Source: Salisapilia sapeloensis CBS 127946 (lineage: Eukaryota > Protista > Oomycota). From it: 64,000 nt of DNA. Within the stretch, counting starts at the first letter, position 1. Each line of letters opens with the position of its first letter. The position numbers and the translations under genes are program-made. The DNA lies in NCBI GenBank assembly GCA_023334545.1, contig JAADVB010000006.1, positions 62,001 to 126,000 on the forward strand, written 5' to 3'. Shown here in pieces: positions 25,300 through 62,369 of this stretch. The notes under the pieces were generated by a model. That model was not told where the DNA came from and did no database searches. It worked only from the letters and a program-made list of their open reading frames with translations.

Positions 25300-28160
25300 A
25301 GCCCGACAAGAAGGACTTTACGATTCATTTCAAGCACGCAACATACGCCGAAACTGTCAGGCAAGACAGTAGAATATATATGACATTAATGAACAATAAT
25401 ACAGACGGAGATATTTTGTTCACGAATTTGCTTGCCATCTTGTAGCATGTTTTGTACATCTACTGCCTAAACGTTTTTGATTTCAAAGACGACAATGTGG
25501 TAAGATTGAATAAGAAAGTAGAGTATGATGTATATACTCCCTGATTCATCGACAAAGCCGAGAGCATCGGTGTTAGAGGACTTCACTTTTTGTTTGCTAT
25601 CTTTCGCAAAGCAAAGATACTAACATGGAACCTTGGGTCCTAGGAAGGTCGTACATTGTATGACCTTTGAGCGAGGTCAGATAAATCGCAACTTTATTCA
25701 AAAATTTAGGCCTTCTTCGCACTGAATACCGATCCGGCGTTATTGGGATTCATCTTTTGTAACTCCCTTTATGATAACCGAAGCGGGCAATTCCGTGTTC
25801 ATTGAGAATAGCCGATTTTGTTTTGCCACTCGACATTGGAAACCTAAGGCAATACTTCAATATAACTTTTCCCACTATATCGAATGCACAAGCGAGTGCT
25901 TTGTACTATCAATGCAAATGCGAATCCATATTCTTGGTTTATCTCTGTCTTCGCCTTTGATGCAATCGGGAGGAAGCTATCTTCGAGAAGACTTCAAGCC
26001 ATGGCCTGTGCTCGAAATGTGCAAATTTGAAAAAACGCGTGAAAGACTCAGTGAGCTCTTCGATTTACTTGCGCTACTGCGCTCTTCGCTATTATTTCGG
26101 AACAGGCGCATTACCGTGGTGAACGAAATAATTGAGCGCCATTTGTAACTCATACTGTACTATGTCCCACTGAAATGGCGAAGAGCTCAATAGCGCAAGT
26201 AAATCGAAAGAAACTTCAACCTGGATGACTTCCGACGAGAAACCACAATACACTCGATACTAGGCCCGCCAAGACACGACAGAGGAATTGACGATAGACG
26301 TGGATAGGAATGGAAAGGTGGATAGCGATGTAAGAGCAGGATGAACCGACAGAGACTTAGTCATTGATTCCTATTACAGTGTTTGCGTCTTTGGTCGCAT
26401 ATACCTTAAATGCATTGGTGCATACCAGATTATCCGTTCAACGAGCACGACCATAAATCTTTACTTTATAAAACCAAAGCAAAGAATGAACGAGCTTGTT
26501 GAAGTGTCTTACAACCAACTTACTGGTACGAGACACAACTTACTCGCCAAGACTACACGATCAAATGAATTTATCTAAGCAATCTTCGCAATGTGCAATT
26601 GGTTTATCTTCATCTCGCCAAACAAAGTATAGGAAAGAGGACATGCCTGGATCCAGTTTGAGTATCATGTCCGTAAGTCATACACTTGGAGACTATGCAA
26701 CTTTGATTCTATGGATCCAGACATTTTCCCTTAAACGAGGTGTCCGGATAAAGTATGGTGCGTAGAAAAATTCGCGAACGCGACAAGAAGCCGGCATTGA
26801 ATCTTTATTAAAAATCTACTTGATTTTTCCTATCAGCTTTTTGATCGCCAATCTAAATCAACATCAGTGCCAACGTTCCTCGCTTTTTGCTCGCTATCAT
26901 GCAGCGTTTATAAATACCTCTGGCTACGTTCTGGTGTACCGACAATCATATAGCTAGAAAAGTAAGTTCTTTCGATGCTTCATGGGAATTGCTATCATTC
27001 AAGGAACGAAAGCTGTGAGCATTCAGTCAATCGCATTCGAGCGCTGTCATATGCGCAGTGTATCTTGGAGAGCAGGAGAATGTCTGCGATGATGACAGTT
27101 ACAAAGGTTTCCCGCTCTTCAGGTGCAAAATTTGCGACGAACAAAAGAAGCACACGAGCATGATGTTTCGACTATATCCAAATATCTATCTAGAAACAAC
27201 TGATGAGTACGCTTACATGTACTTATAAAAACTGGAATATCTGCTGATCTACTAAAACAATGAACGCTTCAGTTGGGATTGAAATTGTGGACACAGTCCA
27301 ACGGCTGTGTAAAGGCATCCGAGTTTGGACGACAGACATCAAGTCGTGTACCCAGAAACCTATACGTTTCGTCCTACAAGCATAATTCCTCTTAATCTTC
27401 TACCAACATCCATTGTCGTCCGTTTTATGTCACAGAGGAATGTACCTACCAAAGTCCTTTTATCTCTTGTATCAATATGACCTCCAGTTTATACAGGCTC
27501 TAGGCAGATGGAAGAGAAGGCAAGTCTGCGACGCTTTTTATAGAAAAGCGTGGAACCTGGTTTTCGATTCCCTCCGTCAAAAGCTAGAGAGTACCCGCAT
27601 GTGACTAAACAGGAATGGGGGATTGTAATCGCAACATCTTGCCTCAGTTGATGCCATCACCTCCATCTTGGCACCATCCTTTGCTTTATCGACCTCATAC
27701 CACTATTTACACTACAATTGCTATCATCTTCTCTTGCGTATCGAAACCGTTTGCACGCGTTCTTGCGTCGACCGACCCGTCAGCTAGCCTCGCGTACCCA
27801 CGTCGTAGGTACAATTCCACTCGAGCGGGACGATTTAGTTCTGAACCCAACGAATAGTCTTTTAAAACGTAAGGATTAGGAGAAAATTAAAGGCGACAGC
27901 GACGTTTTACCATTTTGACTTGCAGACTTCTTTGGTTAGGGCGAGCTCCTTTCCGACCGGCAAAGTGCTTCCAGCCGCGAAAGGCCTCTCGAACGCATTC
28001 ACCCATATCGGCGTTTACGACACACGACCTCTACCGCTTGTCTATCTAATTCTACCTCTATTCTCTTGCCGTTTCGTGCTCTTTCATCGATCGGTACACA
28101 TACCGCTTGCGACGAATCCTACCTCCCTCCTCACACACACTCGCTCCTTTGGTTGAAAGC

Positions 28161-31100
28161 ATGACGTTTAGCTTCAGTGGTAACGGTAGCATCATGTCTG
28201 AACGCGTTCGTACGTCGTCTCTGCAAGCGTACAACTTGTACGAGACGCGTAGGAGCATCGCGAATGACGGGGCCGACCCGACGCAAATTCCGAGCTTTGA
28301 AGAGCTCAATCCGTATAATTCGCACTCGACGCGGAAGGATAAACGGTGGCAACCCGTCCAGGGCTTGTCCCATTCGCATGAATCCATGCGGCTGCGTCAG
28401 TCCGTCGGACAACTATTGTACGAGACACATCAACAGATCTCGGCTGAGGAGCTAGAAGTGCGCGCGAATACGCCCGAGTTCAAGGTCCTCGAGAGCGACT
28501 GGGTTGCTCATAATGCGAACAATCAACTAGCGCTTATTAAACCTCTCAAGACCGTCGCGAGGCTGCCCGTGTCCTTGCTCGTGCTGGACGAACGGCAGTC
28601 GAGTACATCGACCGGTCCGACTCTCTCTGGCTTCCTACGTAAGCGAGGCGAGACGAACAAGGCCTTTAAGAAGCGATACATGGAATTAAACGGTTCAGTC
28701 CTATCCTATTATCGCAAAGTGCCGGAAAAGAACGGCGTGCCGTTATCTCGAGATGATAAAAAGGCACGTGAAAGCGGTAGTATCGACCTCGATAGTGTCT
28801 CATCGTTACAACCGCTCGAGTCGTCCGTCAAGGGTGAACAATTTGGCGTTCAGCTCGTGACGACAAGTCGGACGTGGATCTTGGCAGCAGACTCGCAAGG
28901 TGACTTTGAGCGATGGGTCAAAGCCATGTGTGAAGTGGTCAAGTTCACTGCGATCCACATCAAGTTCAAACGCATGTTCCAGCTACAGGAAGTCAGTTCT
29001 CGCGCTGTCACGGACGTTCGAATGGTCATTCCTGTTGGTGATACAGTCGGAGAAGTCGTGGAGCATATCTTTAACTGCTACCAACAAGCATTGGATGCTG
29101 CACCGTTGAAACCGTATGATCCGAGCAAGTACTTGCTCAAAGTAACTGGATTCCGAGACTATATGATCGATCGTTATCGTGTCGTGAACGAGTACATGCA
29201 CGTCCGTGAGTGTCTGCTCACGAACAAGACGCTACGTCTCACTGTCGTCCACGAGTCGGTCATCCAAGAGACAGCGAATCGCAGTCTGAGCATCCGTCCG
29301 AACATGCCGATCGTCGGGAATGCTATTCGCAATGAACTCGCTGGTTTTGCCGATAACGAACGTCCTGGTCCGGTGTCCATGACGACGCTTGGTGACGCGG
29401 ATTTGGACAGCTTCTCTTCAGCAGATCAAGTCGATGCCATTCCCAGTGGCAACGTCGATGAACCAGTGCGTGTACGTGTGAAGCGTATTCTCAACATTCC
29501 GCGTGAAGTCTACAGTGACACAGGCGAGCTGCGTCCGATCAAGAGCACTGCCGTCGTCGTCCGTGTCCAGCTCTTTGACGGCGGACAACTCATCGACGAA
29601 GGGTCTCTCGACACGAAAGACGTGCGTCTCGTCGGTCAGAGCAAAACATCGCTCTATGCTATCTGGTCTGAACCGGCATGGCATGAGTTCCCGATCACTG
29701 TCGGTGAAATAACAAAGTCCATGCGCATGCAATTCACAGTCCTCGGGACGAAGAAGAGTCCTGGTAGCAGTACTTCATTATCTGCGAGTTCCTCCTCTGG
29801 CATGTCCATGTCATCGATGATGATCGCAGCGGAAGAAAAGATTTTAATCAGTGGCATCAACCTCTTTGACGTCTCAGGACACCTGACACAAGGTGAGCAA
29901 TACATTCGCATGCTGGACAATCGACACAACTGTACCACTGGTCCAGTCCCGCACGTCGTGTATACCAAGAAGCCGATGATTAACATCGATCTGAGCAAAT
30001 TCGACGTCCCGATCGAGTTCAATTGGGACAGTCTTGACAATTCCAACGGCACGCGCTATAAGCGTCGATCTCTTGTGCGTGGCAGTCGATCTACGATGCT
30101 CCATAAGGAAGGCTGGTTGCGGAAAGTTGGGCAGTTCAAGTCGCTCACCAAGTGGCGTCCGAGGTGGTTTGTCTGTGACCAAGAGACGTGCTCTCTTAGC
30201 TACGCTGCAGATGAGAGTGCACCGCGAAAGGTAGTGCCGCTGAAACACTGCTCTGTCAATCGTGCTGATGACATGAACAACAAGTTCACGACGGGTACCA
30301 AGGGTACGCGTAAGGAACGTCAGACGTGGTGCTTCAAAGTGCGTCCGCAGAACTCATCGAGAGATTACATCATGTCTGCTGCGACGAAACAAGAGCGAGA
30401 GGAGTGGATGATGGCGATTCTGACGGTGTCCAAGGGTGAAGGCGCGAATCAGGATCTAGCTGAGACGATTCCGATCGAAGCGCGGCCGGTGTATGGCTTG
30501 GAAGAGAAGCTGTCGCCTGTGAACAGCAACGAGTTGGCGACGGAAGGCTCTGACACGGAGATTCGGCAGTCCATCGGTCGACAACGTGCTGGCTCGAGCT
30601 CAAGTTCGCAGCGTGATGGCGACAGCGACATCTCGGAGCTACGCAAGGTCATTCTAGAAGATCCGTTGTATCCGCTGAGTCCGTACCAGAAGGCTCGTAT
30701 GTGGAAACATCGAGATGAGTTTATTGATCTGCCGGAAGCTCTGCCACGCATCCTGTCGTGTGTCCATTGGGGAGACAAGGCAGAGATGGATGAAGCGCTG
30801 CAGCTCCTGCCGAAATGGCCAGTCCCTGCGAACCACGCGTCGTACTTGGAGCTCTTGAAAGGCGAGTTTGCGAATGAAGAGATTCGTCAGTTTGCCGTCC
30901 ATCGTCTGGCACAGATGGCTGATACGACGTTTAGTTACTTTTTACCACAACTGGTGCAAGCACTCAAGTATGAGAACCACCATCGCTCTCCTCTAGCTCT
31001 GCATTTGATCGAACGAGCGATTAAGAATCCGAATCAGATCGGATTCGATCTTTTCTGGAGCATGAAAGTCGAGTCGCATCATGATCAGTACTTTGAACGC

Positions 31101-32228
31101 TATGGAACGCTCTTGAATGCCTACTTGGATGTATGCAGTAGTAAGATGCGTGATATTCTCAAGCTTCAGGACAAGTTGTTTAGTAAAGACGGTATGTTCG
31201 ATCGTATCTGTCAAGAAGTCAAGGGAAAGGATAGTGATAAATTCGCTATGCATCAGACGATGGAGGAGGGATTGGAAGCGTTGAATGAAATCCTTCCGTC
31301 GTCGTTCCAACTACCGATTGATCCGCGTATCGAAGTCGGGAAGATTGTTGTGAGTAAATGTCGTGTCATGGATTCGGCCAAGAAACCGCTATGGCTTGTC
31401 TTTGAGAATGCAGAGGATGGAGGAGAGGAGATTACGGTTATGTACAAGGCTGGAGATGACGTTCGACAGGACTGTTTGACACTCCAGCTCGTTCGTCTTA
31501 TGGATGAAATGTGGCGCGACGAAGGTCTTGATCTTGCCATGGAGCCCTACAAGTGTGTCGCGACGTCGCCCATGACCGGTATCGTGCAGATCGTCCCGAA
31601 CTCGGTGACGACGGCGCAGATCCAGAAGCGTGTGGGTATCCTCGGAGCCTTCAAAGACCCAAGCTTCTCCGATTGGATTAAGGCGAATAACCCGGATAAG
31701 AAGAGCCACAAGGCTGCTGTGGACCTGTACTCTCGATCAGTAGCTGGCTACTGTGTCGCGACGTTCGTGCTGGGTATCGGCGATCGACACAATGACAACA
31801 TCATGATGCAGTCCAATGGTCGCTACTTCCATATCGACTTTGGTCATTTCTTAGGGCACTTAAAGTACTTCCAAGGCGCCGTGAAACGTGAGCGGACGCC
31901 GTTTGTCTTCACAAAAGAGATGGCACATGTCTTTGGTGGCATGGATACAGAAGAGTATAACAAGTTCGCCCAGACAGCGTGCACGGCGTACAATATTGTG
32001 CGCAAGCACATGCACTTGCTAGCAGCATTGCTGGAGTTGATGGTACCTGCGGACATGCCAGAGCTGTCTGGTCGTGATGACATTAACCACTTGATCATGA
32101 TGTTGAATCCGGAAGCGAGCGATGAAGAAGCTGCTCGGAATCTTGAGATCCTGCTCCACATTTGCGTCGGTGACAAATTCAAGCGACTGGATAATATGAT
32201 TCACATCGTCACGCACCTCCTTGGCTAA
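28161..32228 (+). CDS. Class I-like phosphoinositide 3-kinase with two PH domains (PH-RBD-C2-PH-helical-kinase), intronless
   Basis: Kinase motifs MDSAKKPLWL, YKAGDDVRQD, LGIGDRHNDN, HIDFGHFLG. Helical domain FLPQLVQALKYE. RBD-like YLLKVTGFRDY..YMHVRECL. PH domains at about 28615-28940 and 30093-30425. Confidence 0.93.
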   Translation: MTFSFSGNGSIMSERVRTSSLQAYNLYETRRSIANDGADPTQIPSFEELNPYNSHSTRKDKRWQPVQGLSHSHESMRLRQSVGQLLYETHQQISAEELEVRANTPEFKVLESDWVAHNANNQLALIKPLKTVARLPVSLLVLDERQSSTSTGPTLSGFLRKRGETNKAFKKRYMELNGSVLSYYRKVPEKNGVPLSRDDKKARESGSIDLDSVSSLQPLESSVKGEQFGVQLVTTSRTWILAADSQGDFERWVKAMCEVVKFTAIHIKFKRMFQLQEVSSRAVTDVRMVIPVGDTVGEVVEHIFNCYQQALDAAPLKPYDPSKYLLKVTGFRDYMIDRYRVVNEYMHVRECLLTNKTLRLTVVHESVIQETANRSLSIRPNMPIVGNAIRNELAGFADNERPGPVSMTTLGDADLDSFSSADQVDAIPSGNVDEPVRVRVKRILNIPREVYSDTGELRPIKSTAVVVRVQLFDGGQLIDEGSLDTKDVRLVGQSKTSLYAIWSEPAWHEFPITVGEITKSMRMQFTVLGTKKSPGSSTSLSASSSSGMSMSSMMIAAEEKILISGINLFDVSGHLTQGEQYIRMLDNRHNCTTGPVPHVVYTKKPMINIDLSKFDVPIEFNWDSLDNSNGTRYKRRSLVRGSRSTMLHKEGWLRKVGQFKSLTKWRPRWFVCDQETCSLSYAADESAPRKVVPLKHCSVNRADDMNNKFTTGTKGTRKERQTWCFKVRPQNSSRDYIMSAATKQEREEWMMAILTVSKGEGANQDLAETIPIEARPVYGLEEKLSPVNSNELATEGSDTEIRQSIGRQRAGSSSSSQRDGDSDISELRKVILEDPLYPLSPYQKARMWKHRDEFIDLPEALPRILSCVHWGDKAEMDEALQLLPKWPVPANHASYLELLKGEFANEEIRQFAVHRLAQMADTTFSYFLPQLVQALKYENHHRSPLALHLIERAIKNPNQIGFDLFWSMKVESHHDQYFERYGTLLNAYLDVCSSKMRDILKLQDKLFSKDGMFDRICQEVKGKDSDKFAMHQTMEEGLEALNEILPSSFQLPIDPRIEVGKIVVSKCRVMDSAKKPLWLVFENAEDGGEEITVMYKAGDDVRQDCLTLQLVRLMDEMWRDEGLDLAMEPYKCVATSPMTGIVQIVPNSVTTAQIQKRVGILGAFKDPSFSDWIKANNPDKKSHKAAVDLYSRSVAGYCVATFVLGIGDRHNDNIMMQSNGRYFHIDFGHFLGHLKYFQGAVKRERTPFVFTKEMAHVFGGMDTEEYNKFAQTACTAYNIVRKHMHLLAALLELMVPADMPELSGRDDINHLIMMLNPEASDEEAARNLEILLHICVGDKFKRLDNMIHIVTHLLG

Positions 32229-32561: not shown

Positions 32562-34672
32562 TTACTTTCGGAAACGTCGACTCTTTCCCTGCTTCTTCAG
32601 ACCGAGTTCACCAACACCGCGTTTCTTTCGACGCTGAGAATTATCCTGTCCGTCCTGCTTTTGCCTGTCACTTTTCGGGATGAAAGACATTTCGCGAACG
32701 TAACCTTCCGCATTATCCTTCCGGAACGAACTGGTTTCATGACCGCCTTGTTCACGTTCCATGCGTACTCGTTCCGCGAGTGGAATTTTGGCCAGTTTCT
32801 TCTTTTCTTTCTGCTCCGCACGATCACGTGCCGTGCCGAACTCTGTCAGGTCATCCACCTGTTCACCCTTGGCTAGTTCATAGAATTTCGGCTTCTTGTG
32901 CTCAGGAGCTTCATCTTCCGATGAAGACACGTCTTCTTCCTCTGCATCTGAAACCAGATCGAATCGACCTGCCTCCTCTTCCTCCTCTTCCTCCTCGTCG
33001 TCCTCTGCACCATCACTATCCATATCTTCATTTTGCTTCTTCTCCTTGCCTGCATTCGGATGCAGACGCCTGTACTCGGCACTATCCTCATCCACTTCAA
33101 ACTCTTTGCTCGTGAACATTCGCGAGAAACGGTCATCGCCAAGTGGATTCGCCAACGTATCGTCTTCCGGCACTTGTTCCTCATCCTTCTTGTTCTTCGA
33201 CTTGATCAGTCGTTCCGCCGTCGCACGATTAACCTTTGGCAATCTGCGCTGGATAGTAATACGGTTCGCATGCTTCGCTTCGAGTTTCTCCTGCATCTTC
33301 TTCTTTCGATAGTCTTCGTACGCAAACGGATTCGCTATCGCCTTCACCTTATTGTACAATCGAGCATCCATGAAGAACCCATGCATGTACGCTCGAAGCA
33401 AGGCAGTGCCAATAAGATGTTCGAGACCAAAGGACGCCAGCTCTTGTCTCGTGACGAACTTATAGTCGTCGTACACTGTCGCCTGGGCTTCTTCCTCCAG
33501 CTCTTCCGTGATGGAATCGAGGAAGGAACACCACTTGGGTGCGACGCCGAGTTCAGGAACGTAATAAGACATGACACGCTCTTGTTCTCCAGCTACAAGC
33601 ACGACACCAGACTGTTCTTGAGACTGTGTGCCAGCGCCGACAACACACACGTCCCGGACTTCAGCTGGTGTCTCGACATTCGTGAAGATGTCACCAGTGT
33701 CTCGATCCCACATCTTGAGTACTTTCGAGTCGGAAGAGATGACGTTGTTCGAGGTGGAGTGGAACTTAATATCGACGATCGGCAGGCCGTACTGGTGCGA
33801 CTTGTGCAGTAACGGCTTGGAGGACCGCAAATCGTACAGGAGGCAATTGCCATCAGATGTGCCGACGCCAAAAGTGAGTCCATCGCGATCGAATTCCATC
33901 GCTGTGATCTCAAAGTTTGACGGAGGTCCGTTTGGATGCACGGCGTCTGCGATTGAGTCGAGCAATCCCACTCGCTCCTGACTGCGTGTATCCCAGCACT
34001 CTACTATGCCGTCTTCACATCCGAGTCCTAGTAGCTGGTGCACGGGGTTTAGTTTAACTGTATTCACGCCGGTGGAAGAGGTGGCTAGTGGAGCTAGGAA
34101 GCGTCCTTGGTCCAAGTTGAGACGATAGACTTCGGGGCCAGATGCACCAATGTACATATCGCAATTCTCGCGTTGATAGCACATGTCTCGACCGAATTTC
34201 GGCACACGAAGACTGTAATGAGAACCGTATGGAGCATGGAAGACGATAGATCTATCCGTCTGAAGGAAGGCGAGCTTCCCAAAGTCTTGCGACAGGATTT
34301 CGAATTGCACGACTTCCGCATCCAGTCGTCGCTCGAACTTGAGACTCAAGTCTCGGACGTCAAAGACTTTGACGACTGGAGGGTACATACCCGTGCCTAC
34401 GATATAGTTTCCATCTCCAGACATCTTAAGACGCTGGGACCCGGATGGAAAATGGAAGTCCTGCAGCAATTCAACGCGTTTACGGTAGTCTATAGCCCAA
34501 TACATCTCAGGTCATGCTTCCAGTTACTCTACTTTGCACATAGAATAAAATTACCTTCATCTTTCGACAGCGCTCTCTTGGTCTTCTCTGCCTGCCATTG
34601 TGGCAATGTTTTTCCAGACGCCAAGTTGTAGATCTTGACGCCATTAAGCGTCGAAGCAGCCAGCGATGCCAT
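32562..34672 (-). CDS. NOL10: Nucleolar protein 10 (Enp2), WD40 + NUC153, 2 exons
   Basis: Exon 1 MASLAASTLNGVKIYNLASGKTLPQW, intron 34490-34554, then DYRKRVELLQDFHFP, LGVAPKWCSFLDSITEELEE, LLRAYMHGFFMD, DDRFSRMFTSKEFEVD. Confidence 0.95.
32955..33010 (-). repeat. GAG/GAA-rich low-complexity tract encoding an acidic run in NOL10
   Basis: cctcctcttcctcctcttcctcctcgtcgtcc encodes EDDEEEEEEEE. Confidence 0.6.
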
Positions 34673-52202: not shown

Positions 52203-55200
52203 ATGGAGGAACCCAACCAGCTAGAGCAAGATGCGAGTTTCATGGACAAGTACAGTCGGCAAATTGGTGCCTTTGGTATGGAAACCATGGCCAAGGTACA
52301 TTTCATCTTTCTTACTTTTATTCTTTTATCCGAATGGATAAAATCATTTGTATGGAATTATATCGATGCTCATGTCCGACCTCTTGTCTCTGTAGCTCGT
52401 AAAGCTGCGTGTACTCATCGTTGGTATGCGTGGTGTCGGTGTTGAATGTGCTAAGAACCTCATTCTCGCTGGTCCTGGAGCTATCACACTCTACGATGGT
52501 GAGTCGTTTGCTTCTAAGTGTTTGAATGGTCCTTTTGACGCTGTACACTTGTAGACGGCTTAACCGAAATGAAGGATCTTGGAACCAACTTTTTCCTGAC
52601 GGAACAAGACGTTGGTCGACCTCGTGCGGATGCTGTCGCCCACAAGGTTCGTCTACTTGGCTAAAATTATTATTAGACAGTTTTTACTTCTTCTTTCTAT
52701 TTAGTTGGCCGAACTGAACAAGATGGTGTCGCTATCGACACACCAGGGTGAATTGACGGAAGACGTGGTAAAGTCTCATAATGTCGTCGTGTTCACAAAC
52801 ACGTCTCGACAGGAATTGCTGCGTTGGAACCGCTTCTGTCGACAGCAGAGTCCTCAGATCGGGTTCATCATGTGTGATGTTCGTGGTGCCATGGGCTCTG
52901 CCTTCACGGACTTTGGCGACAAGTTCATGTGCCACGACGCAACGGGTGAAGCACCGATCACACGCATCATCACGGACATTACGAACGATTCTGACGGAGT
53001 CGTCACGCTCCTCGGTCCAGACGAGAATGGTCGAATGCACGAAATGCCAGACTCGGACCACGACGGATGGGTTGAAATCAGTGATGTCGACGGTATGCGT
53101 CTCGAATCGGACTCTTCCCAGTCGATCAACTCGAGCGGTCCTCGACGCATTCAATTCGCGACTAAGAAGATGTTCCGGAATGGAAAGCAAGTCGATGTCT
53201 TCGATCCGTATCGACTGAAGATCGGAGACACATCGGCATTTACACCTTATGAAGGTGGTGGTGTCTTGACACAATACAAGAAACCGTTCGCGATGGAATT
53301 CCAGTCGCTAGAGCAGATGCTCGCGAATCCCGTGCCACCAGGTGACTTTGGTCTCATGTTCACGGATGGCGCCAAGTTCGGACGAGCAGAGCAGCTGCAT
53401 GTCGCTGTGTGGAGTATCATGGAGTTTGAAAACCGATACGGGTATCTCCCTGAGCCGCATAACGAACAACACGCGTCCGAAGTGCTAGACATTGCCAAGG
53501 GCGGCATCCAGCACTTGTCAGACACGACGCGATCCACCGGCCAGGAGCCTTTCCGTGTAGAAGAACTTGATGAAGGTGTGGTGAAGAACGCTGCCTTGTA
53601 CTGCGCTATCGAGCTACAGCCGCTCGCAGCCTTCTACGGCGGCATCGTCGCGCAGGAAGTGGTTAAGTTCACGGGTAAGTTCACGCCGATGAAGCAATGG
53701 CTTCACTTGGATGCTTTCGAAGTGCTTCCGGAGAAACCTCCGACGGATGCACAGCCGATGCAGTCTCGTTATGACCATACGATTACCATGTTCGGTCGTG
53801 ATTTCCAGCAAAAGATGGGAGACGTTCATACGTTCCTCGTCGGATGTGGAGCCCTCGGTTGTGAATACCTTAAGAACTTTGCCATGCTCGGTCTTGCGTG
53901 TGGTCCGAATGGGCTCGTGACGGTCACTGATAACGATCGTATTGAAGTGAGTAACTTGAACCGTCAATTCCTCTTCCGAGAGCATAATGTCGGGCAACCT
54001 AAATCCGTTGCTGCGACGAATGCCGTGAAGCAGATGAACGCTGGGCTACGTGTTAAGGCACTGGAACAGCTCGTGGCGACGCATACTGAGTCGACTTTCA
54101 ATGATGATTTCTGGACGAGCTTGGATGTCGTGACGAATGCACTGGATAATGTCAAAGCACGCAAGTACGTCGATGGCAAGTGTGTCTTCTACAAGCTGCC
54201 GTTGCTAGAGAGCGGGACGTTAGGAACGAAATGTAACGTCCAAGTGGTGATCCCGTACAAGACGCAGAGCTACTCGGACGGCCCGGCAGATGCAGATGAT
54301 GATAACATTCCTATGTGCACGCTCCGAAACTTTCCGTCATTGATCGAACACTGCATCGAGTGGGCTCGAGCGCAGTTCACGGACTGGTTCACGGCGCCTA
54401 TTGCCGATGCGCAGAACTTTGTTCAGGATCGACAGGGGTACTTGGACAAGGTGCGCAAGTCAACGGTTGAAAATAAGGATCCGAGGACGGCGATGCAGGC
54501 GACGGTCATGGAGTTGGATCGGTTGCGACAGCTAAAGAAGACGTTGCATATCGCCAAGGGCATTACGTTTGATACGTGCATGCAAATGGCGGTTGACTTG
54601 TTGCGTTCGAATTTCCGTGATCGTATCTTGCAGTTGATTCATAACTTTCCTGAAGATCACATGACGGATGCTGGCGAGAGGTTCTGGTCCGGTGCCAAGC
54701 GTTTCCCGACTGCGATTGATAAATTCGATCCGGAAGATCCGCTGCATCTCGAGTTCGTTCGATCTGTTGCGAATATCTTGGCTGTATGCTACGGTCTGTA
54801 TCCGCCACCGGAAGACAAGTTGGTACCAGAAGACTCTGAGTGGCGACAGCCGACGACGTACGAGAAGTTTGCCGACGTGGCGTCGTTCCCAGAGTGGACA
54901 CCTTCGGATGAGAAGATTGCAGCGGATACAGAAGAGCTGAAGAAGATGGAAGAGGAGAAATTAAGCAGCTCTTCGGATTCCGAGAAGAGAGAGTTGGAGA
55001 AATTGCTCAAGGAACTCGAAGCAGTCGATCTACAGGACGTCGCGTTCGAGCCAGCTGACTTTGAGAAGGATCAGGACATGAACTTCCACATTGACTTTGT
55101 CTACGCTGCTGCCAATTTACGCGCGAGTAACTACAAGATCCGTCAAGCGTCTCGCCATAAGTGCAAGATGATCGCTGGTAAGATCATCCCGGCGATTGCT

Positions 55201-55788
55201 ACCACGACGGCGAGTGTCACTGGTCTCGCGATGCTCGAGATGCTCAAGCTGCTGCAGAAGAAGGACTTAGATGCGTTTAAGGATTCTAGTAATTCGTTGG
55301 CGTTAAATATGTACTTGATGCAGGAACCAGCGGAGGCGGAGAAGGCCAAGGATGAGTACGACTTTGTCGAAATGTCCGAAGTCAAGTGCAAGCCGCCGGG
55401 ATTTACCAAGTGGGACTCGACGTACCTCGAATTGTCGTCGGAAGCGACGCTGTCGGACTTTTTGAATGCTTTTAAAGATAAGACAGGTTTGAACTGCACG
55501 CTTCTCTTCCATGATGTGGCGGAAGCGAGCGCGGATGAAGAAGCGTCGACGTCGGATCCGAGGTACAAGGCTGTGAGCGGGCAGATGTTGTACGACCGAT
55601 CGGCGTTCTCAGAAAAGTTGAAAACTCTGTTTAATGCGAAACTGCATGAACCGTTGCGTGCGTGGGTCGAGACGCGTTACGAGGGTCTAGTCGATACGAG
55701 TCGACCGTACATTGAGCTCCAGTCGTCGTGTGAAGATGATGACGGACAGGCCTACAAGGTTCCGGTCGTCGTCTGCAAATTCATCTAG
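52203..55788 (+). CDS. UBA1: Ubiquitin-activating enzyme E1
   Basis: YSRQIGAFG, VGCGALGCE, DRIEVSNLNRQFLFR, catalytic IPMCTLRNFP, KIIPAIATTTA and C-terminal UFD. Short 5' exons precede the large exon that starts near 52705. Confidence 0.96.
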
Positions 55789-55971: not shown

Positions 55972-57845
55972 ATGGATGACATCGAGGACATAATTAATGA
56001 AGAGGAGTTGCAGCGGTCGGCTGTGGAGCTTTCCAGGACACCGATGGTACCTCCAAAAGCGGCTGCCAAGGTGGAGGTAGAAGAAGATGCCTCTGAGGTC
56101 GGTAAGAGTGTTCCTGGCACGGAAGCGATTTGGTACAGTCTGATGGATATGCCGTGTATTATCTTTTACTGATAAGCACATAGGCTCAAGACGTTTGGCT
56201 GCTCGCATAACGTCAGTGATAGCGAGTATATGCAAGGGGTTTTAGCGAGCTATGGTTATCGTTTTACAACGAACCCATCGGATGCCCAATTATGGTATAA
56301 TACCATTTTCTATACGAAGCGTACATGCATCTAATACGTTATATGGACAGGCTTTTAAATAGCTGCACGGTCAAAGATCCATCTGAAGCAGCGTTCATGC
56401 ATCTCGTGACCAAAGCCAAGAATCAGGGCAAAGGCATTGTTGTCGCAGGCTGTGTACCGCAGGCAGATCGACAAATTAAAGGATTGGAAGGCGTTAGTAT
56501 CGTCGGTATCCAGCAAGTGGACCGTGTCGTGGAAGTGGTGGAAGAGACTTTAAAAGGACATACAGTTCGCTTATTGTCTCGATCTGGACTACCAAAGCTA
56601 GATTTGCCTAAAATTCGGAAAAACCCGAGTGTAGAAATCATTCCGCTAAGCACTGGATGTCTAGGTGCCTGCACCTACTGTCGAACACGCCATGCTCGTG
56701 GGAAATTAGGTAGCTACGCACCGGAAGCCATTGTCCAGAGAGCGCAAAGTGTCATTGACGAAGGTGTGACGGAGATTTGGTTGTCTAGTGAAGACACTGG
56801 AGCGTACGGCTTGGACATTGGGACCACTCTCCCGGAGCTCTTGTGGAAGATCATTGACGTTCTGCCGGATGGAGTCATGCTACGCGTGGGTATGACGAAT
56901 CCTCCGTACATTCTAGACCACTTGGACGCCATTGCGCAGGTGCTTAACCATCCAAGTGTGTACGCTTTCCTCCATGTCCCGGTACAATCCGGAAGCAATG
57001 AAGTGTTGACGAACATGTATCGAGAGTACACGGTAGAAGAGTTTAGTCAAGTAGCAGACTACCTTTTAGCTCATGTTCCGAAGATGACACTTGCGACGGA
57101 TATCATCTGTGGATTCCCAGGTGAGACGGAAGAGCAGTTTGAAGAGACGATGCAACTCGTGGAAAAGTATCGTTTCCATATTATGAACATCTCGCAATTC
57201 TACCCTCGACCAGGCACACCTGCTGCCAAGATGAAGCGCGTACCGACGCAAGTCGTGAAGAATCGTAGTCGTCGATTGACAAAGCTTTTTGAAACGTTCG
57301 ATCCGTATCCTTACTTTGTCAGTACGACGCAGAAAGTGTGGGTGAATACAGAGACGTCGGACGATGGGAAGTACACGGTCGGACATACAAAAAACTTTAC
57401 AAAGGTCTTGATGCAGAGAGATGACTCGCTCATCGGGTGCTCAGCTCAAGTGAAAATCACGAGCGCTTCGAGGTTCCACATCAGTGGTGAAGTTGTCTCC
57501 CGATCGGAACCACCAACGAGGGCTGCGTGTGTCGTCCGAGATGAAATCCGGACGCATGGTCGAGACTCTCAAAAGAACAAAGTTCCAGTGAAAGTCGAGT
57601 CCAAGTCGACGGATGAGCTTTCGAATGACTGTTGTGGAGATGATTGTTGTGGAAGTTGCGATAGTCAACCAGCACAAGAGGATGTGAAGAAGCCTTCGAC
57701 TGCGTCTAGTTGGATACAAAAGGCAAGTATCAAATGTCAGGAAGTTTGGAACGACAAGGTGGCTTTAGCTGCTTTCGCGACAGTCGTGGCATCTACTACG
57801 CTAGTGACTATTCGAATGTTCCAACTAAGTCGTTCGAGCAGTTAA
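55972..57845 (+). CDS. CDKAL1: tRNA t6A37 methylthiotransferase (radical SAM + TRAM + C-terminal TM)
   Basis: MDDIEDI, KTFGCSHNVSDSEYMQG, NSCTVK, CLGACTYC (CxxxCxxC), SEDTGAYG, QFYPRPGTPA and a C-terminal TM anchor. Confidence 0.95.
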
Positions 57846-58117: not shown

Positions 58118-59242
58118 ATGGGGACTGCCGTGTCGATGCTGCTCTTCCAGCCACCACCGCCGTCGTACGGTTTCAAACGTCACTATATGTGCCTCAGTAC
58201 ACCGGTCTACAGCCGCATCTCGGCCTTTTACATCTCCAACCCGTAATACCTTATTGACATTCTTTATGACGATTTGACGTCTCAATGACATTACCATGTC
58301 ATCGATACATCGTGCAGATCCGCGCAGTACACCATCCTCTTCTCACATGGCAATGCTGAAGGTAGAAGCTCTTACAATTCCCTTTTACTTCTACTCATGT
58401 ACTACGAACAGATCTTGGCATGATTTACGACTGGTTTCGGATCATTAGTCGACGATTAGAAGTAGATCATCTATATGTCTATATAATATCTAGTAGTTAC
58501 AACTAATCTTCGACTGGAATGACGCAGGTGAATGTCATGGCATACGACTATCCAGGCTACGGCACGAGTGAAGGTGAACCGAGTGAAGAGAGCTGCTATG
58601 CTGCCGCTGATGCAGCGCTCAATTACCTCGTTTCGAATAAGAAGACGCCTCCGTCACGCATTATTCTGTACTCTATTCCTATACGACGTATCATGCCTTT
58701 GCTAATCACATACATAGGTACGGTCGATCACTTGGATCTGGACCAACGACGTACATCGCGTCTAATCAGTCCGTGAAAGAGGATCCGGTGGCTGGTGTCA
58801 TCCTCCAGAGTCCACTACTCTCTGTCTTTCGAGTCGCGTTCAACTTTAGGTTCACGCTGCCAGGCGACATGTTCTGCAACATCGATCGGATTGACCAGAT
58901 CACATCGCCTGTTACGATCATCCACGGGACTCGAGATGAAGTCGTTCCGTTTTGGCATGGAGAAGAACTCTTTGAAGCGTCTCGACAAGAGTGGAGGTCG
59001 AAACCAATGTGGGTTGTCGATGCCGGACATAACAATATCGAGGCGCATTTGAGGTACTTGCATACGTATCAACTTTTTATGCGAAGGTGTAAGTAGATGG
59101 ATATAGTGAGCTTGGAGATGAGTTCTTTTTGCATTTGAAGGACTTTGTCCGGATCTGTGATGAGACGGCCAAGATACGGAAACAAGATGCTTTGGATTGG
59201 GCACAAGAGTGCGCACAAGTCAAGATAAATGGTAGTAACTAG
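58118..59242 (+). CDS. ABHD17-like alpha/beta hydrolase (protein depalmitoylase family), multi-exon
   Basis: LFQPPPPSY, ILFSHGNAE|DLG, YDYPGYGTSEG, YGRSLGSGP (nucleophile), IHGTRDEVVPFWHG, AGHNNIE. Last intron 59055-59108, stop at 59240-59242. Confidence 0.9.
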
Positions 59243-59374: not shown

Positions 59375-60748
59375 TTAATTCTTTTCTCTGGCTCGATGTC
59401 TCTTTGTCAGCCGAACATTTACTTTATCTATCGCATCGGTTTTCATCGACGGACTGTTCTCTGGGCCGCTGGTGTTCGTATCCATTGTAGCGAGCGCTTT
59501 TCGCTTCTTCGGGCTGCTATTCGCATGAGCTTTCTCCTCAAGAGCTTTGATCTGGGACTGCATCATCGCTTCTTTAGCTCGGAAGGCCGCCTTGAGATCG
59601 GCAAGCTCCTGTTCAAGATCAGATACCTTGTTTTCCTTTTCCTCCAGTTTTTCGCTGAAAGCTTCTGCTAAGGTCTGTGTGACAGCTGATCGAAGGTTTC
59701 CCTCCGAAAGACTCTTGTGGATGTACTGCTCTGTTGCATTGTGCAGAGCACTTAACGCAACGGAACTAACGCCCAATGAGAATTGCAATACATTGCGGAA
59801 GAGCTCGAGGAAAGCTGGTCGAGAAATCAAGTACTCGTTTCGTCTGTCCTCTTTGGATAGCAAGTCTTGGACTGCATCTTCATCATTAAGTTGGAAAAGA
59901 CCTTGGAATTCAGTCCAAAGGTCTTCTTCTTCCATATCGGCTGCTGATTGTTCCTGGACAATATCAGTCGGTTCTTCCGGCTCATCACAGTCCGACAGAT
60001 CGCCTTGGCCTGGAAGGGAGTCCATGAAGTCATCTTCAGTGCTTTCAGTAGAAACGGATAAGAGTTGCTCGTCCACCACATCTTGAGCAGATGATAATGA
60101 GTGGAGTAAAGCATCCCTAGATTCCTCGACTGCATCCTCCATCTTGTCATCTTGTCCATCGTCGTCACTAAAGTCACTGTCATTCGACTCGTCGTCACTG
60201 TCTCCGAACCAAGACCACTCGCTTTCTTCATCTTGAACGTTTTCAACTTCTCCAGTTCTAGCTTGCCAGTTCTCGTAATTGCGGACGAAATCTGTCTTGG
60301 CGTACCGAGAAGCAGGCTCATTATCCGGCTCACCATTACTCTCTTGCCACTGGTTATATATCAACGGAAGCTCCACCATCTCCGTCACATGATACAGTGT
60401 CTCTCGTCCACCACGTTGAATGGCACACATATCGTCGAAGCCATAGAGTTGAATGCCTTGAAGTCGACAAGCGCGAATAACATCATCAAGCGTAATGTGT
60501 GTCCTACTTCCATGTTGTGCCAGGACCAGCAGCGCCTGCACCAACTCCTGAATAAACGCCACAAGATGCTTTCTCGTACAAGTTGCCGTTGCTGCACAAC
60601 TTTGGCGGAATCCAGCTCGGAGGTGGAATTTACGCATGAGCATATCAGGAAGTACCTTTTCGACCTCTCTCTGTCCATATTCACTTTCCTCTGCTACTTT
60701 CCGATTCGCATACACATCTCGTTGTCGCACGACATACCTCTCCATCAT
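59375..60748 (-). CDS. Histone H4-like + H3-like double histone-fold protein with acidic linker and C-terminal coiled coil
   Basis: 60437-60655 aligns gap-free to H4 residues 29-100 (19/72 identities by hand, ending QGIQLYGF vs QGRTLYGF). 59693-59840 aligns to H3 residues 58-109 (about 18/52; EYLISRPAF..ALHNATEQY..EGNL vs ELLIRKLPF..ALQEACEAY..DTNL). Confidence 0.78.
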   Translation of the reverse strand: MMERYVVRQRDVYANRKVAEESEYGQREVEKVLPDMLMRKFHLRAGFRQSCAATATCTRKHLVAFIQELVQALLVLAQHGSRTHITLDDVIRACRLQGIQLYGFDDMCAIQRGGRETLYHVTEMVELPLIYNQWQESNGEPDNEPASRYAKTDFVRNYENWQARTGEVENVQDEESEWSWFGDSDDESNDSDFSDDDGQDDKMEDAVEESRDALLHSLSSAQDVVDEQLLSVSTESTEDDFMDSLPGQGDLSDCDEPEEPTDIVQEQSAADMEEEDLWTEFQGLFQLNDEDAVQDLLSKEDRRNEYLISRPAFLELFRNVLQFSLGVSSVALSALHNATEQYIHKSLSEGNLRSAVTQTLAEAFSEKLEEKENKVSDLEQELADLKAAFRAKEAMMQSQIKALEEKAHANSSPKKRKALATMDTNTSGPENSPSMKTDAIDKVNVRLTKRHRAREKN

Positions 60749-60907
60749 CTTCCAAGCAAAAGTCAAACTGAAGGCTTTCAAACTTTTTGGCGCGATATGT
60801 CCATTTTAATTATGTGCCATCTATCTTGTAAGAAGTATATAGTAGGTATATTTTTATGATACAGCTTTAAGCGGGAAACTTATCGACCGGAACGGACCAG
60901 TAGGAAA

Positions 60908-62369
60908 ATGGAGGATGACGATTTAGACCAGCGAATTACGTTCTTGCTACAGGAGATCGATGGTAACTTGTCTGCTGCACATCAAGCGGCGACACAGGTC
61001 TTTAGTAGCGTCCGACGGCATCACCAAGTGCTACGACAGATCCACTCGGCGACGCAGATCTGGCAGCCTCTTTTCGATGCCTGCAGAGGTCGTCAGCCCC
61101 CTCTACGTAGGCCTACGATGACACCGAGCAAGTATCCACACAGGACGTCTGCCGTCCATGTGAATAGCAATGCCGTGGAAGACGCGACGCCGGATGATTT
61201 AGACGGCACGTCTTTCGTACCGAATGCCGATGGCTTTAAAACCACCAAATTACGCACGAGTGTGAATCAGAGCAATAGCGAGAGTGCAAATTCAAGTGCT
61301 GAGAGTGCAAAACTACCCAAGACGATGACACCGATCTTGCCAAAGAGTCCTGCTGGTAGACGTGCAAGACAGCAGCAGAACGAGTCCTCGACTTCGAACA
61401 TTTTACATCATAATTGGGGCTCATTCTTGCGCACGGACGTTATTGATGTACTTTTACCTACTACATTTCGTTATGTATGGAACTAATACGCTGCGGTAGG
61501 CTCAAGCAGCTACGCATACGGTCGGATCAGAGATTAGTAGTGTCGAGCAAGCGAGTCCTGGCGTCAATGTGAATCTGTCGGAAGTCGGAGCGTTTGAGCT
61601 GACACCGCATGACAAGTCTCGTCGTGCTGGTTCCCAGCCTGTTGCTTCGAATGCAGACACGTCCAAGTCACCGAATAGGCAGAGTATGTCGCCACGAGTA
61701 CGAATGGACGGATCGCATCGAAAGCGACAGAGACGCCTATCGGACGATCCTTCGACGCCGAAGAAGCGACATACGATGGGCAGAACAGCTTCACCGAATT
61801 TACGTCGAAAGTATGGCGCCGCACAGCAGGCGACGCCACCGAGATTCCATAAAGCGAGGATGTCTGCACCAGAGCAGAATTCGACCAGTACAGACGCGAA
61901 TGTCGAGATGACGTCACCTCTGCTTCGAACGACATTGAAAGGGATGGGGAGGAATACGCCATTGTCGAACCGAATCGCCGGTGCGACGTATGACGCCGGG
62001 TCTGCGTCGCAAGAGAGTAGGCTACAAGAGTACGACTCTTCCTTTTCTACAGGCATGCCGCCTCCAGAGTTTACCTTGTCTCAATTCCCACCTTCGTTCC
62101 AGGTACATTGATGCATTATCTTAAAGAGATCTAGTAGCTCATGCATGACATAGCAAGGGAAGAGTGCAGTGGCCTTGTCGACGTTGTATAGCAAGTTCCA
62201 GGGCAATGACGATGCATCTCGACCTGCTTTGTCCGTTCCGGAACTGATCGAGTCGATGCCGGATGAAGGAGAAGAGAAGATTGAGATCATGCTTGACTTG
62301 CTCGTCTCGCGGCGCTTCTTGCGTGCTTTTACGGTCGAAGGACGAATGTACTGGCAAGCGTCTGTATGA
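60908..62369 (+). CDS. ASK1: DASH/Dam1 complex subunit Ask1, 3 exons, with C-terminal winged-helix-like extension
   Basis: LDQRITFLLQEIDGNL..AH....V...V....QIW...F matches the Ask1 N-terminal signature LEQxITLxLQEIDxNF. Introns 61448-61499 and 62103-62153 keep the frame. Several S/T-P-x-K/R CDK sites are present. Confidence 0.8.

What the first reader, a model, noticed from the sequence alone, without database searches (positions are those of the whole stretch)
59375..60748. Single-chain H4-H3 histone doublet with a long acidic linker
Seen: an N-terminal H4-like fold aligns with no gaps to H4 29-100, keeping R-G, TR..L..F, H..R..IT..DV..A...QG..LYGF. About 200 aa of D/E-rich linker follow, then an H3-like alpha1-L1-alpha2 (YLISRPAFLELFRNVLQ..SSVALSALHNATEQY..EGNL). 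H3 alpha3 appears replaced by a coiled coil, and a basic NLS-like tail ends the protein. Known: canonical H3 and H4 are separate genes in eukaryotes, and covalent H4-H3 doublets in this order are known from giant viruses such as Marseilleviridae. Inference: this is a divergent cellular histone doublet, possibly a nucleosome variant, histone mimic or self-chaperoning H3/H4 module in which the acidic linker shields the DNA-binding surface. Loop 1 is shorter than in canonical H3, the opposite of CenH3.
Basis: partly seen in the sequence, partly recalled or inferred. Interest (0 to 1): 0.85.

Follow-up and report, generated by a model that had tools for sequence, protein, structure and literature searches.

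The report
Cellular single-chain H4–H3 histone-fold protein
This oomycete gene encodes one acidic nuclear-type protein that joins a histone H4-like fold to a truncated histone H3-like fold, an arrangement so far described only in giant viruses; it belongs to a conserved, unnamed stramenopile family that probably does not wrap DNA as a normal histone does.

Summary
Window 59375-60748 (minus strand) is a single 457-aa ORF. Residues 37-105 match histone H4 without gaps (E 2e-5 alone; family profile E 5e-9, with only H4 chains among the best hits). Residues about 305-352 match H3 alpha1-L1-alpha2 specifically (hhalign P 2e-10 against H3 halves of H4-H3 doublets, nothing against their H4 halves). 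H3 L2-alpha3 is replaced by a ~60-residue amphipathic helix, followed by a KKRK-containing basic tail.

AlphaFold models of this protein and of an Aphanomyces homologue superpose best on giant-virus histone doublets (TM 0.56-0.60 per target). This indicates an intramolecular histone handshake.

The gene belongs to a conserved, unannotated family found across oomycetes and in unplaced marine stramenopile-like contigs. The two halves are always fused. No member was found in viral contigs, and no paper on the family was found.

It is not a normal histone. Net charge is -42. Both L1 'sprocket' arginines (H4 R45, H3 R83) are lost family-wide. The 'linker' is partly folded and carries invariant acidic-aromatic motifs.

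My best reading is a nuclear, non-nucleosomal histone-fold scaffold or histone mimic that dimerises through its coiled coil. The function itself is inferred, not shown.

The parts
59375..60748 (-). Complete single-exon CDS, 457 aa plus stop, of the H4-H3 histone-fold protein
   Evidence: ORF list. Aligns end to end with 450-530 aa oomycete homologues.
60647..60748 (-). N-terminal segment, residues 1-34. Net charge 0, with no H4-type GKGGK tail. Conserved start MEYRVRKR in relatives.
   Evidence: Low to medium pLDDT.
60434..60646 (-). H4-like histone fold, residues 35-105: alpha1 35-44, L1 strand 49-51, alpha2 52-79, L2, alpha3 87-96, LYGF strand 101-104
   Evidence: PDB phmmer E 2e-5. Family profile E 5e-9. 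hhalign P 5e-19. Foldseek H4 chains with TM 0.74-0.88 per target. pLDDT 90-96.
59846..60433 (-). Acidic middle region, residues 106-301, net charge -51. Modelled folded segments at 107-126, 147-165, 199-229 and 261-301. Disordered acidic segments at 135-144, 170-196 and 234-260.
   Evidence: Charge. Conservation. AF2 secondary structure and pLDDT.
60209..60223 (-). Conserved acidic-aromatic motif SEWSW, residues 176-180, in a low-confidence (probably disordered) stretch. E177 and S184 are invariant and W178 is nearly invariant among the 18 sequences of alignment A1.
59981..60013 (-). Conserved motif PGQGxxSDxDE, residues 246-256, in a disordered stretch. G247, G249 and S252 are invariant in alignment A1. 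It looks like an acidic, CK2-type serine site or a short binding motif (inference).
59699..59845 (-). H3-like alpha1-L1-alpha2, residues 302-350: alpha1 310-321, L1 bridge 326-327, alpha2 329-349. The invariant ALSALHN..E motif corresponds to H3 A88-E97.
   Evidence: PDB profile hits are all H3 or CENP-A. hhalign P 2e-10 against H3 halves and P 0.3 against H4 halves. Residue map. pLDDT 81-96.
59522..59698 (-). Long amphipathic helix, residues 351-409, that takes the place of H3 L2-alpha3. It has a 7-residue hydrophobic stripe and is a putative coiled coil.
   Evidence: AF2 shows a single helix with pLDDT 92-95. Heptad count. Conserved in the family.
59378..59521 (-). Basic, disordered C-terminal tail, residues 410-457, net charge +7. 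KKRK at 414-417 is NLS-like. This copy lacks the terminal KKxR(I/V)NP motif that most relatives have.
60749..60907 (.). 159-bp intergenic region shared head-to-head with the DASH Ask1 gene; a putative bidirectional promoter
   Evidence: Sequence. The arrangement is conserved in Globisporangium, P. sojae and L007.

Best explanation
The gene encodes a genuine cellular member of an unnamed stramenopile family that is oomycete-wide. In it, an H4-derived histone fold and an H3-derived alpha1-L1-alpha2 sit in one chain and pair with each other in the classical head-to-tail handshake.

Shown or modelled:
- Each half is specifically H4-like or H3-like (shown).
- The order is always H4 then H3, always fused, with conserved synteny in cellular genomes (shown).
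- The two halves are modelled as one histone pair.
- H3 L2-alpha3 is absent and is replaced by a long amphipathic helix.
- The protein is strongly acidic (net -42).
- The two L1 arginines that canonical H3-H4 insert into DNA minor grooves are lost throughout the family.

Inferred:
- The protein is nuclear (KKRK tail).
- It dimerises through the C-terminal helix as a coiled coil, in place of the H3-H3' four-helix bundle.
- It acts not as a DNA-wrapping histone but as a histone-fold scaffold or histone mimic. Its folded acidic insert packs on the fold in cis. Its two invariant disordered acidic-aromatic motifs engage basic partners in trans, most plausibly histones or other chromatin or kinetochore proteins.
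For: Fold identity:
- H4: E 2e-5, E 5e-9 and P 5e-19.
- H3: all 60 top PDB hits, and P 2e-10 with a clean negative control.

Intramolecular pair:
- AF2 gives pTM 0.66 (window protein) and 0.69 (Aphanomyces homologue).
- The best BFVD hits are histone doublets aligned across both halves, TM 0.56 and 0.48 per target.
- The best PDB hit for the homologue is the Melbournevirus doublet chain 7n8n_A, TM 0.60, followed by single-chain H2B-H2A chimeras.

Family:
- 20 oomycete hits at 32-39% identity, all 'hypothetical'.
- 15 library representatives at E<1e-30, plus distant full-length relatives.
- The halves are fused in all 35 aligned members.
- The abhydrolase and Ask1 neighbours are conserved.
- No relatives in IMG/VR.

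Not a DNA wrapper:
- pI 4.6; the H4-like fold is only +4 and the H3-like part +1.
- The H4 R45 and H3 R83 positions are never Arg.
- No H3 alpha3 or four-helix-bundle residues.

Coiled coil: single 59-residue helix with a heptad hydrophobic stripe.
Against: - No experimental or expression data for any member were found.
- The function is inferred from composition and lost residues only.
- Several basic residues that touch DNA in H4 and H3 (H4 R35, R36, R40, R78; H3 K64, R72) are retained as Arg in oomycetes, so some DNA contact cannot be excluded.
- The handshake rests on AlphaFold models and Foldseek scores with weak E-values (0.006-0.34). I could not inspect coordinates or contacts.
- Dimerisation and nuclear import are untested.
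- Foldseek RMSDs over the full-length alignments are large (14-17 A), because of the insert.
Confidence: 0.55

Rival explanations
1. It is a specialised nucleosomal (or tetrasome-forming) H3-H4 variant. Two copies, bridged by the coiled coil instead of the H3-H3' bundle, would bind DNA at particular loci. The acidic insert would act as a built-in chaperone that is displaced on deposition.
For: The fold pair is truly H4/H3-derived. Several DNA-contacting arginines are kept in oomycetes (H4 R35/R36/R40/R78, H3 K64/R72). The protein has an NLS-like tail. Viral H4-H3 doublets with the same order do build nucleosome-like particles (PMC8357426, listed).
Against: Net charge is -42 and pI 4.6. Both L1 sprocket arginines are lost family-wide, and the retained arginines are lost in the distant relatives. 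There are no histone tails and no H3 alphaN or alpha3.
Confidence: 0.12
2. It is a kinetochore or centromere histone-fold component, functionally analogous to CENP-T/W/S/X. It would be co-expressed with the DASH subunit Ask1 from a shared bidirectional promoter.
For: The gene lies head-to-head with a DASH_Ask1 gene (Pfam E 1.6e-10), 159 bp away. The same arrangement occurs in Globisporangium, P. sojae and contig L007. There are sub-threshold Pfam hits to CENP-S (E 0.013) and CENP-T_C (E 0.07).
Against: The Ask1 adjacency is absent in Aphanomyces and in the distant relatives, and oomycete genomes are broadly syntenic anyway. The CENP-S/T hits are below threshold. From my own knowledge (not tested here), they are expected for any H4-like fold, since Pfam's CENP-T_C model also covers H4. 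Domain order and architecture differ from CENP-T.
Confidence: 0.15
3. It is a domesticated giant-virus H4-H3 doublet that was acquired by an early stramenopile and then elaborated. Alternatively, the viral doublets and this family share one ancient fusion.
For: The H4-then-H3 order is the same, and viral doublets are the best structural matches. The family profile hits metagenomic ~200-aa H4-H3 doublets in two collinear stretches.
Against: In the H4-domain tree the family forms its own clade, not nested in or sister to the doublets, though support is weak (71) over 79 columns. No relatives in IMG/VR. The locus is conserved and cellular. Similarity to canonical H4 and H3 is as good as to the doublets. 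An independent fusion explains the data equally well.
Confidence: 0.12
4. The resemblance is to the generic histone fold only, and the protein is a divergent member of a known non-histone family (SPT3, TAF11/13, TAF6/9, NF-Y, CHRAC).
For: From my own knowledge, SPT3 is a cellular single-chain H4-like/H3-like pair with a long linker, so such architectures exist.
Against: No Pfam TAF, SPT3 or NF-Y model is hit by any of 18 members, even at E<=1. PDB hits are exclusively H4 for the N-terminal half and H3 or CENP-A for the C-terminal half. The H4-specific C-terminal LYG(F/Y) strand is invariant.
Confidence: 0.04

Closest known systems
Marseilleviridae H4-H3 histone doublets (e.g. the Melbournevirus nucleosome-like particle, PDB 7n8n)
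   Same: One polypeptide with the H4 fold first and the H3 fold second, paired in cis. These are the best structural matches for both models. The family profile matches doublet-type proteins in two collinear stretches.
   Different: The doublet-type proteins compared here (from metagenomes; viral origin likely but not shown) are about 200-260 aa with a short connector, a complete H3 (L2, alpha3) and the H3 L1 arginine retained. From the literature, viral doublets wrap DNA.

This protein is 457 aa and has a net charge of -42. It carries a 100-200-aa partly folded acidic insert and lacks H3 L2-alpha3. It adds a coiled coil and is encoded at a conserved cellular locus, with no viral relatives found.
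Canonical eukaryotic H3-H4 heterodimer
   Same: The sequence-level parentage of both folds. H4 33-100 and H3 62-109 are alignable. The H4 Y98-G99 strand, H4 D85, and H3 A88/L92/E97 are conserved.
   Different: Canonical H3 and H4 are separate genes. Here there are no basic tails, no H3 alphaN, L2 or alpha3, and no H3-H3' bundle residues. H4 R45 and H3 R83 are lost, and the overall charge is acidic.
SPT3 / SUPT3H (intramolecular TAF13-like plus TAF11-like histone-fold pair; from my own knowledge)
   Same: A cellular, non-nucleosomal protein in which an H4-type and an H3-type fold, separated by a long linker, pair within one chain. It is the best functional analogy for a scaffold role.
   Different: No Pfam match to the TAF13/SPT3 or TAF11 models. 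The similarity here is to H4 and H3 proper. SPT3 has no acidic insert or coiled coil of this kind.
CENP-T/W and CENP-S/X kinetochore histone-fold proteins
   Same: Non-nucleosomal histone folds. Weak Pfam hits to CENP-S (E 0.013) and CENP-T_C (E 0.07). The gene neighbours a kinetochore gene (Ask1) in part of the family.
   Different: The hits are below the curated cut-offs. CENP-T carries its fold at the C-terminus and pairs in trans with CENP-W. There is no fused partner, no acidic insert and no such coiled coil.

Membership tests
Histone H4 | Histone fold (alpha1-L1-alpha2-L2-alpha3) that matches H4 better than other histone-fold families | tested here: met
   Only H4 chains appear among the best 60 PDB hits, at E 2e-5 (single sequence) and E 5e-9 (profile). 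hhalign P 5e-19 against H4 halves, versus 2e-4 against H3 halves. Foldseek TM 0.74-0.88.
Histone H4 | C-terminal LYGFGG strand | tested here: met
   LYGF at residues 101-104. Y and G are invariant in oomycetes, and present in 6 of the 7 distant relatives.
Histone H4 | Basic N-terminal tail (GKGGKGLGKGGAKRHRK) and the L1 arginine R45 that enters the minor groove | tested here: not met
   The N-terminal 34 residues have net charge 0 and no such motif. The R45 position is Q here and T/S/L/V elsewhere, never R.
Histone H3 / CenH3 | alpha1-L1-alpha2 matching H3 | tested here: met
   All 60 best PDB hits of the domain profile are H3 or CENP-A residues 62-112. hhalign Prob 96.8, P 2e-10, with the control at P 0.3.
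Histone H3 / CenH3 | L2-alpha3 and the H3-H3' four-helix-bundle residues (C110, H113, and alpha3) | tested here: not met
   alpha2 runs on into a 59-residue helix with no L2 or alpha3. The H113 position is L/I/V and the C110 position is variable.
Histone H3 / CenH3 | N-terminal tail plus alphaN, and the L1 arginine R83 | tested here: not met
   No ARTK-type tail. The R83 position is G here and Q/E/K/P elsewhere.
Giant-virus H4-H3 histone doublets | H4 fold followed by H3 fold in one chain, paired in cis | tested here: met
   Order shown. Pairing is modelled: doublets are the best fold matches across both halves.
Giant-virus H4-H3 histone doublets | Two complete histone folds with a short connector, basic and DNA-wrapping; encoded by a virus | tested here: not met
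   The H3 half is truncated. The insert is 196 aa and net charge is -42. The locus is a conserved cellular one, and there are no relatives in IMG/VR. DNA wrapping itself is not testable here.
SPT3 / TAF11-TAF13 type intramolecular pair | Match to the Pfam TAF13/SPT3 and TAF11 models | tested here: not met
   No such family is listed for any of the 18 members, even at E<=1.
CENP-T / CENP-S | Score above the Pfam gathering cut-off for CENP-T_C or CENP-S | tested here: not met
   CENP-S scores 16.3 bits against a cut-off of 28. CENP-T_C scores 13.6 bits against 28.1.

The most novel reading that the evidence does not exclude
This is an ancient cellular H4-H3 fusion that shares a single origin with the giant-virus doublets, as either their source or a domesticated copy. 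It would still assemble on DNA as a coiled-coil-bridged, non-canonical tetrasome-like particle at special chromatin, such as centromeres, in line with its shared promoter with the DASH subunit Ask1. That would make it the first cellular single-chain nucleosome-type histone.
Probability: 0.1. Interest if true: 0.9.

Novelty: new variant of a known kind. Interest (0 to 1): 0.66.

Why it matters
Fused histone pairs have been treated as a viral peculiarity. One survey states that H4+H3 doublets appear exclusive to Marseilleviridae (10.1101/2021.11.30.470311). [quoted passage not shown]

A conserved cellular family with the same H4-then-H3 order bears on two questions. One is whether viral doublets arose by fusion of eukaryotic histones. 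The other is how easily an H3-H4 pair can be re-purposed. In this family the H3 tetramerisation module is swapped for a coiled coil and the DNA-inserting arginines are removed.

The family also gives oomycetes, which include major crop pathogens, and unplaced marine stramenopiles a lineage-specific chromatin-type protein with no annotation. This protein can be tested directly by tagging, knock-out and reconstitution.

Tried and rejected
- **Pfam scans.** Scans of the whole protein, of both ends and of all 18 family members gave nothing above threshold, only weak CENP-S/CENP-T_C hits and coiled-coil noise.
- **Wider word-based search.** A second search with an alignment of the distant relatives, meant to recover named members outside oomycetes, returned only two sequences already in hand.
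- **Viral contigs.** A scan of IMG/VR with the family alignment found no relatives.
- **Origin by phylogeny.** The H4-domain tree has 79 columns. It shows the family as its own weakly supported clade and cannot resolve viral against eukaryotic ancestry.
- **Ask1 link.** The adjacency holds in four peronosporalean genomes but is absent in Aphanomyces and in the distant contigs. I therefore demoted it to a hint.
- **Frameshift at the C-terminus.** I checked whether the missing terminal KKxRINP motif was hidden by a frameshift. Another frame reads EKRINRM across the stop codon. It then runs on without a stop and is not convincing.
- **Literature.** Searches for histone doublets in oomycetes or stramenopiles, and for six locus tags of family members, found nothing on this family.
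- **Contacts in the models.** These could not be examined, because model coordinates are not exposed.
Full report
**1. What is there**

The minus strand of the window carries an uninterrupted ORF at 59375-60781. The first ATG, at 60748, gives a 457-aa protein. Its start and end align with homologues of 450-530 aa, so it is a complete single-exon gene. The surrounding window is a gene-dense eukaryotic region of about 48% GC. It contains UBA1, a PI3-kinase, NOL10, a radical-SAM enzyme and protein kinases. All named homologues of the finding are oomycete proteins.

**2. The H4-like half**

- phmmer against all PDB chains aligns residues 37-104, ungapped, to H4 33-100. The best E-value is 2.2e-5, and every listed hit is H4.
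- A profile of 18 family members raises this to about 5e-9, again with only H4 chains.
- Profile-profile comparison with the H4 halves of seven H4-H3 doublet proteins gives Prob 99.1, P 5e-19. Against their H3 halves it gives only P 2e-4.
- In the AlphaFold model this segment has pLDDT 90-96. It superposes on nucleosomal H4 with TM 0.74-0.88 per target.
- Pfam gives only sub-threshold CENP-S and CENP-T_C hits. From my own knowledge (not tested here), the CENP-T_C model also covers H4.

**3. The H3-like half**

- A profile of residues 302-362 from 16 members was searched against PDB. All 60 best hits are H3 or CENP-A, always over H3 residues about 62-112. Individual E-values are marginal (0.09-1).
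- The decisive test is hhalign. Against the H3 halves of the doublets it gives Prob 96.8, P 2.3e-10 over 52 columns (pre-alpha1, alpha1, L1, alpha2). Against the H4 halves of the same proteins it finds nothing (P 0.3).
- The invariant family motif ALSALHN..E corresponds to H3 A88-E97.
- Beyond H3 position about 109 the similarity stops. In the model alpha2 (329-349) kinks at the near-invariant G350 and continues as a single helix, 351-409 (pLDDT 92-95). There is no L2 or alpha3.
- That helix has a hydrophobic residue every seventh position. It is followed by a disordered basic tail (net +7) containing KKRK.

**4. Do the halves pair?**

- For the window protein (mean pLDDT 72.9, pTM 0.66), the two best BFVD matches are 'histone-like' doublet proteins of Pithovirus LCPAC304 and Marseillevirus LCMAC101. 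They align over about 345 columns with TM 0.56 and 0.48 normalised to the 223-234-aa targets. A match confined to the ~80-residue H4 half could not reach TM 0.56 on a 223-aa target, so both halves appear to superpose at once.
- An independent model was made of the shorter Aphanomyces homologue P0020 (32-sequence alignment, pLDDT 79.4, pTM 0.69). Its best PDB match is the Melbournevirus doublet chain 7n8n_A (TM 0.60 per target). Single-chain H2B-H2A chimeras follow.
- DSSP also shows the short L1/L2 bridge residues expected of a handshake: 84-85 with 326-327 in the window model.

I regard the intramolecular pair as well supported but still a model.

**5. The 'linker'**

It is not, however, a featureless tether.

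- The family alignment shows conserved blocks: HVTEMVE, EPDxEPGxxxKTDFVxNY, SLxxAQxxVDEQL and EDxxW.
- AlphaFold models several segments with confidence. These are a hairpin at 107-120 directly after the LYGF strand, helices at 154-165 and 199-229, and a hairpin plus helix at 279-301 just before the H3-like alpha1.
- A matching hairpin is present in the Aphanomyces model. It may supply the strand that H3 L2 normally gives to H4 L1 (inference).
- Two highly conserved motifs lie in low-confidence stretches and look like short linear motifs: SEWSW (176-180) and PGQGxxSDxD (246-256).

**6. Family and distribution**

- The word-based search found 20 proteins, all oomycete or unnamed metagenomic and all 'hypothetical'. 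They include Phytophthora, Peronospora, Hyaloperonospora, Nothophytophthora, Globisporangium and Aphanomyces. Identity is 32-39% for the 19 full-length family hits. The Aphanomyces hit is weak (E 2.5e-5, 26% coverage).
- The exhaustive representative search found 15 clusters at E<1e-30. These include Pythium oligandrum and P. insidiosum and short Saprolegniales-type forms of 310-385 aa.
- It also found distant full-length relatives with the same architecture: P0036, P0045, P0050, P0052, P0057, P0073 and P0105.
- These distant relatives come from unnamed contigs, some from Tara Oceans samples.
- The contig carrying P0073 belongs to a stramenopile not close to any named genome. Its thiolase is 66% identical to oomycete and 61-64% to diatom proteins.
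- One contig of mRNA-like size ends in an A-run and holds the whole fused ORF. This is compatible with a single transcript but does not prove one.
- Aphanomyces has two paralogues.
- In all 35 aligned members the two halves are fused in the same order.
- No relative was found in IMG/VR viral contigs.
- In an H4-domain tree the family is one clade apart from both ordinary H4s and the doublets. Support is weak.

**7. Why it is probably not a DNA-wrapping histone**

- Whole-protein net charge is -42 and pI is 4.6. The H4-like fold is only +4 and the H3-like part +1.
- I mapped family residues onto canonical numbering. H4 R45 and H3 R83, the L1 arginines that insert into the minor groove (from my own knowledge of the nucleosome structure), are never arginine in any subgroup.
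- The H3 residues of the H3-H3' bundle are gone, and there are no histone tails.
- On the other side, H4 R35/R36/R40/R78 and H3 K64/R72 equivalents remain Arg in oomycetes, though not in the distant relatives. Residual nucleic-acid or acidic-partner contacts are therefore possible.

**8. Context**

- The gene lies head-to-head, 159 bp apart, with a DASH-complex Ask1 gene (Pfam E 1.6e-10). It lies tail-to-tail with an alpha/beta-hydrolase gene.
- The Ask1 pairing recurs in Globisporangium polare, P. sojae and contig L007. It does not recur in Aphanomyces or the distant contigs.
- The hydrolase neighbour is conserved more widely, including in Aphanomyces and weakly in L006.
- This shows an old cellular locus. 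It is only a hint of mitotic or kinetochore co-regulation.

**9. Mechanism, committed**

The most likely reading is a nuclear, non-nucleosomal histone-fold module. A cis-paired H4/H3-type dimer would be stabilised by its own folded acidic insert. It would be dimerised by the C-terminal coiled coil in place of the H3-H3' bundle. Two disordered acidic-aromatic motifs would be presented to basic partners. In short, it would act as a scaffold, histone mimic or chaperone-like factor (confidence about 0.55).

- Shown: fold identities, order, fusion, conservation, charge and lost residues.
- Modelled: the handshake and the helix.
- Inferred: localisation, dimerisation and partners.

Rivals are a variant tetrasome former (0.12), a kinetochore component (0.15, partly overlapping with the best reading), a viral-derived doublet (0.12; this concerns origin, not function) and a generic TAF/SPT3-type fold (0.04).

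**10. Comparison and novelty**

- The closest known objects are the Marseilleviridae H4-H3 doublets. They share the order and the cis pairing, but they are short, basic, complete and DNA-wrapping.
- As a functional analogy, the closest is SPT3 (from my own knowledge). No Pfam match supports membership.
- Full-text searches found no paper on this family.
- Published surveys describe H4+H3 doublets as exclusive to Marseilleviridae and histone repeats as rare in eukaryotes.

I classify it as a new variant of a known kind: a cellular, acidic, H3-truncated, coiled-coil-bearing H4-H3 single chain. Interest is 0.66. The object is real, conserved and unexpected for histone biology, but its function is still entirely inferential.

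Noticed in passing
window 60908-61486 (+), probably continuing to about 62111: This is a DASH complex subunit Ask1 gene (Pfam E 1.6e-10), head-to-head with the finding. A second ORF, 61569-62111 (+), matches by eye the C-terminal part of the P. sojae neighbour gene. The gene therefore seems to be split by an intron or a frame change. The adjacency is conserved in four peronosporalean genomes but not in Aphanomyces.
   Followed up: partly
window 58519-59096 (+): An alpha/beta-hydrolase (Hydrolase_4 / Peptidase_S9-like) gene lies convergent with the finding and is split over at least two ORFs. The same neighbour is conserved in Globisporangium, P. sojae and Aphanomyces, and weakly in the distant stramenopile contig L006.
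   Followed up: partly
window 59375-59420 (-), C-terminus of the protein: This copy ends ...TKRHRAREKN. It lacks the terminal KKxR(I/V)NP motif present in nearly all relatives, including the most distant ones. Another reading frame across the stop codon reads EKRINRM. That could be a remnant of a frameshift, an assembly error or chance.
   Followed up: partly
proteins P0060, P0067, P0160 (hits; sequences): These proteins of 209-269 aa have an H4-like fold at the N-terminus followed by an unrelated C-terminal domain. Two of them (P0060, P0160) end in ...Y(F/L)I. They are a different, apparently unannotated H4-fusion architecture.
   Followed up: no
proteins P0035, P0038, P0040-P0043: These database entries string canonical H4-H2B-H4, H4-H3-H4 or H4-H4 together. 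They look like run-through gene models over histone gene clusters rather than real fusions. They inflate the 'multi-stretch' hits of the profile search.
   Followed up: no
L011 and L012 (Aphanomyces euteiches / A. cochlioides): Aphanomyces carries two diverged paralogues of the family (P0020, and P0046/P0171/P0172) at different loci. The Saprolegniales-type forms lack about 100 residues of the middle region.
   Followed up: partly
metagenomic doublets P0068, P0078, P0090, P0099, P0100, P0141, P0142: In most of the ~200-aa H4-H3 doublets, a cysteine follows the H4 C-terminal strand. A second cysteine (DC) precedes the H3 alpha1 in six of the seven. The oomycete family also has a near-invariant Cys shortly after LYGYDD (C108). 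Whether these are related is unknown.
   Followed up: no
window 6149-10096, 28107-32228, 32562-34505, 52705-55788, 56325-57845: Ordinary eukaryotic housekeeping genes: a C2/WW protein kinase, a PH-domain PI3-kinase, NOL10, the ubiquitin-activating enzyme E1, and a radical-SAM/UPF0004 enzyme. These fit a gene-dense, intron-poor oomycete-type genome.
   Followed up: no
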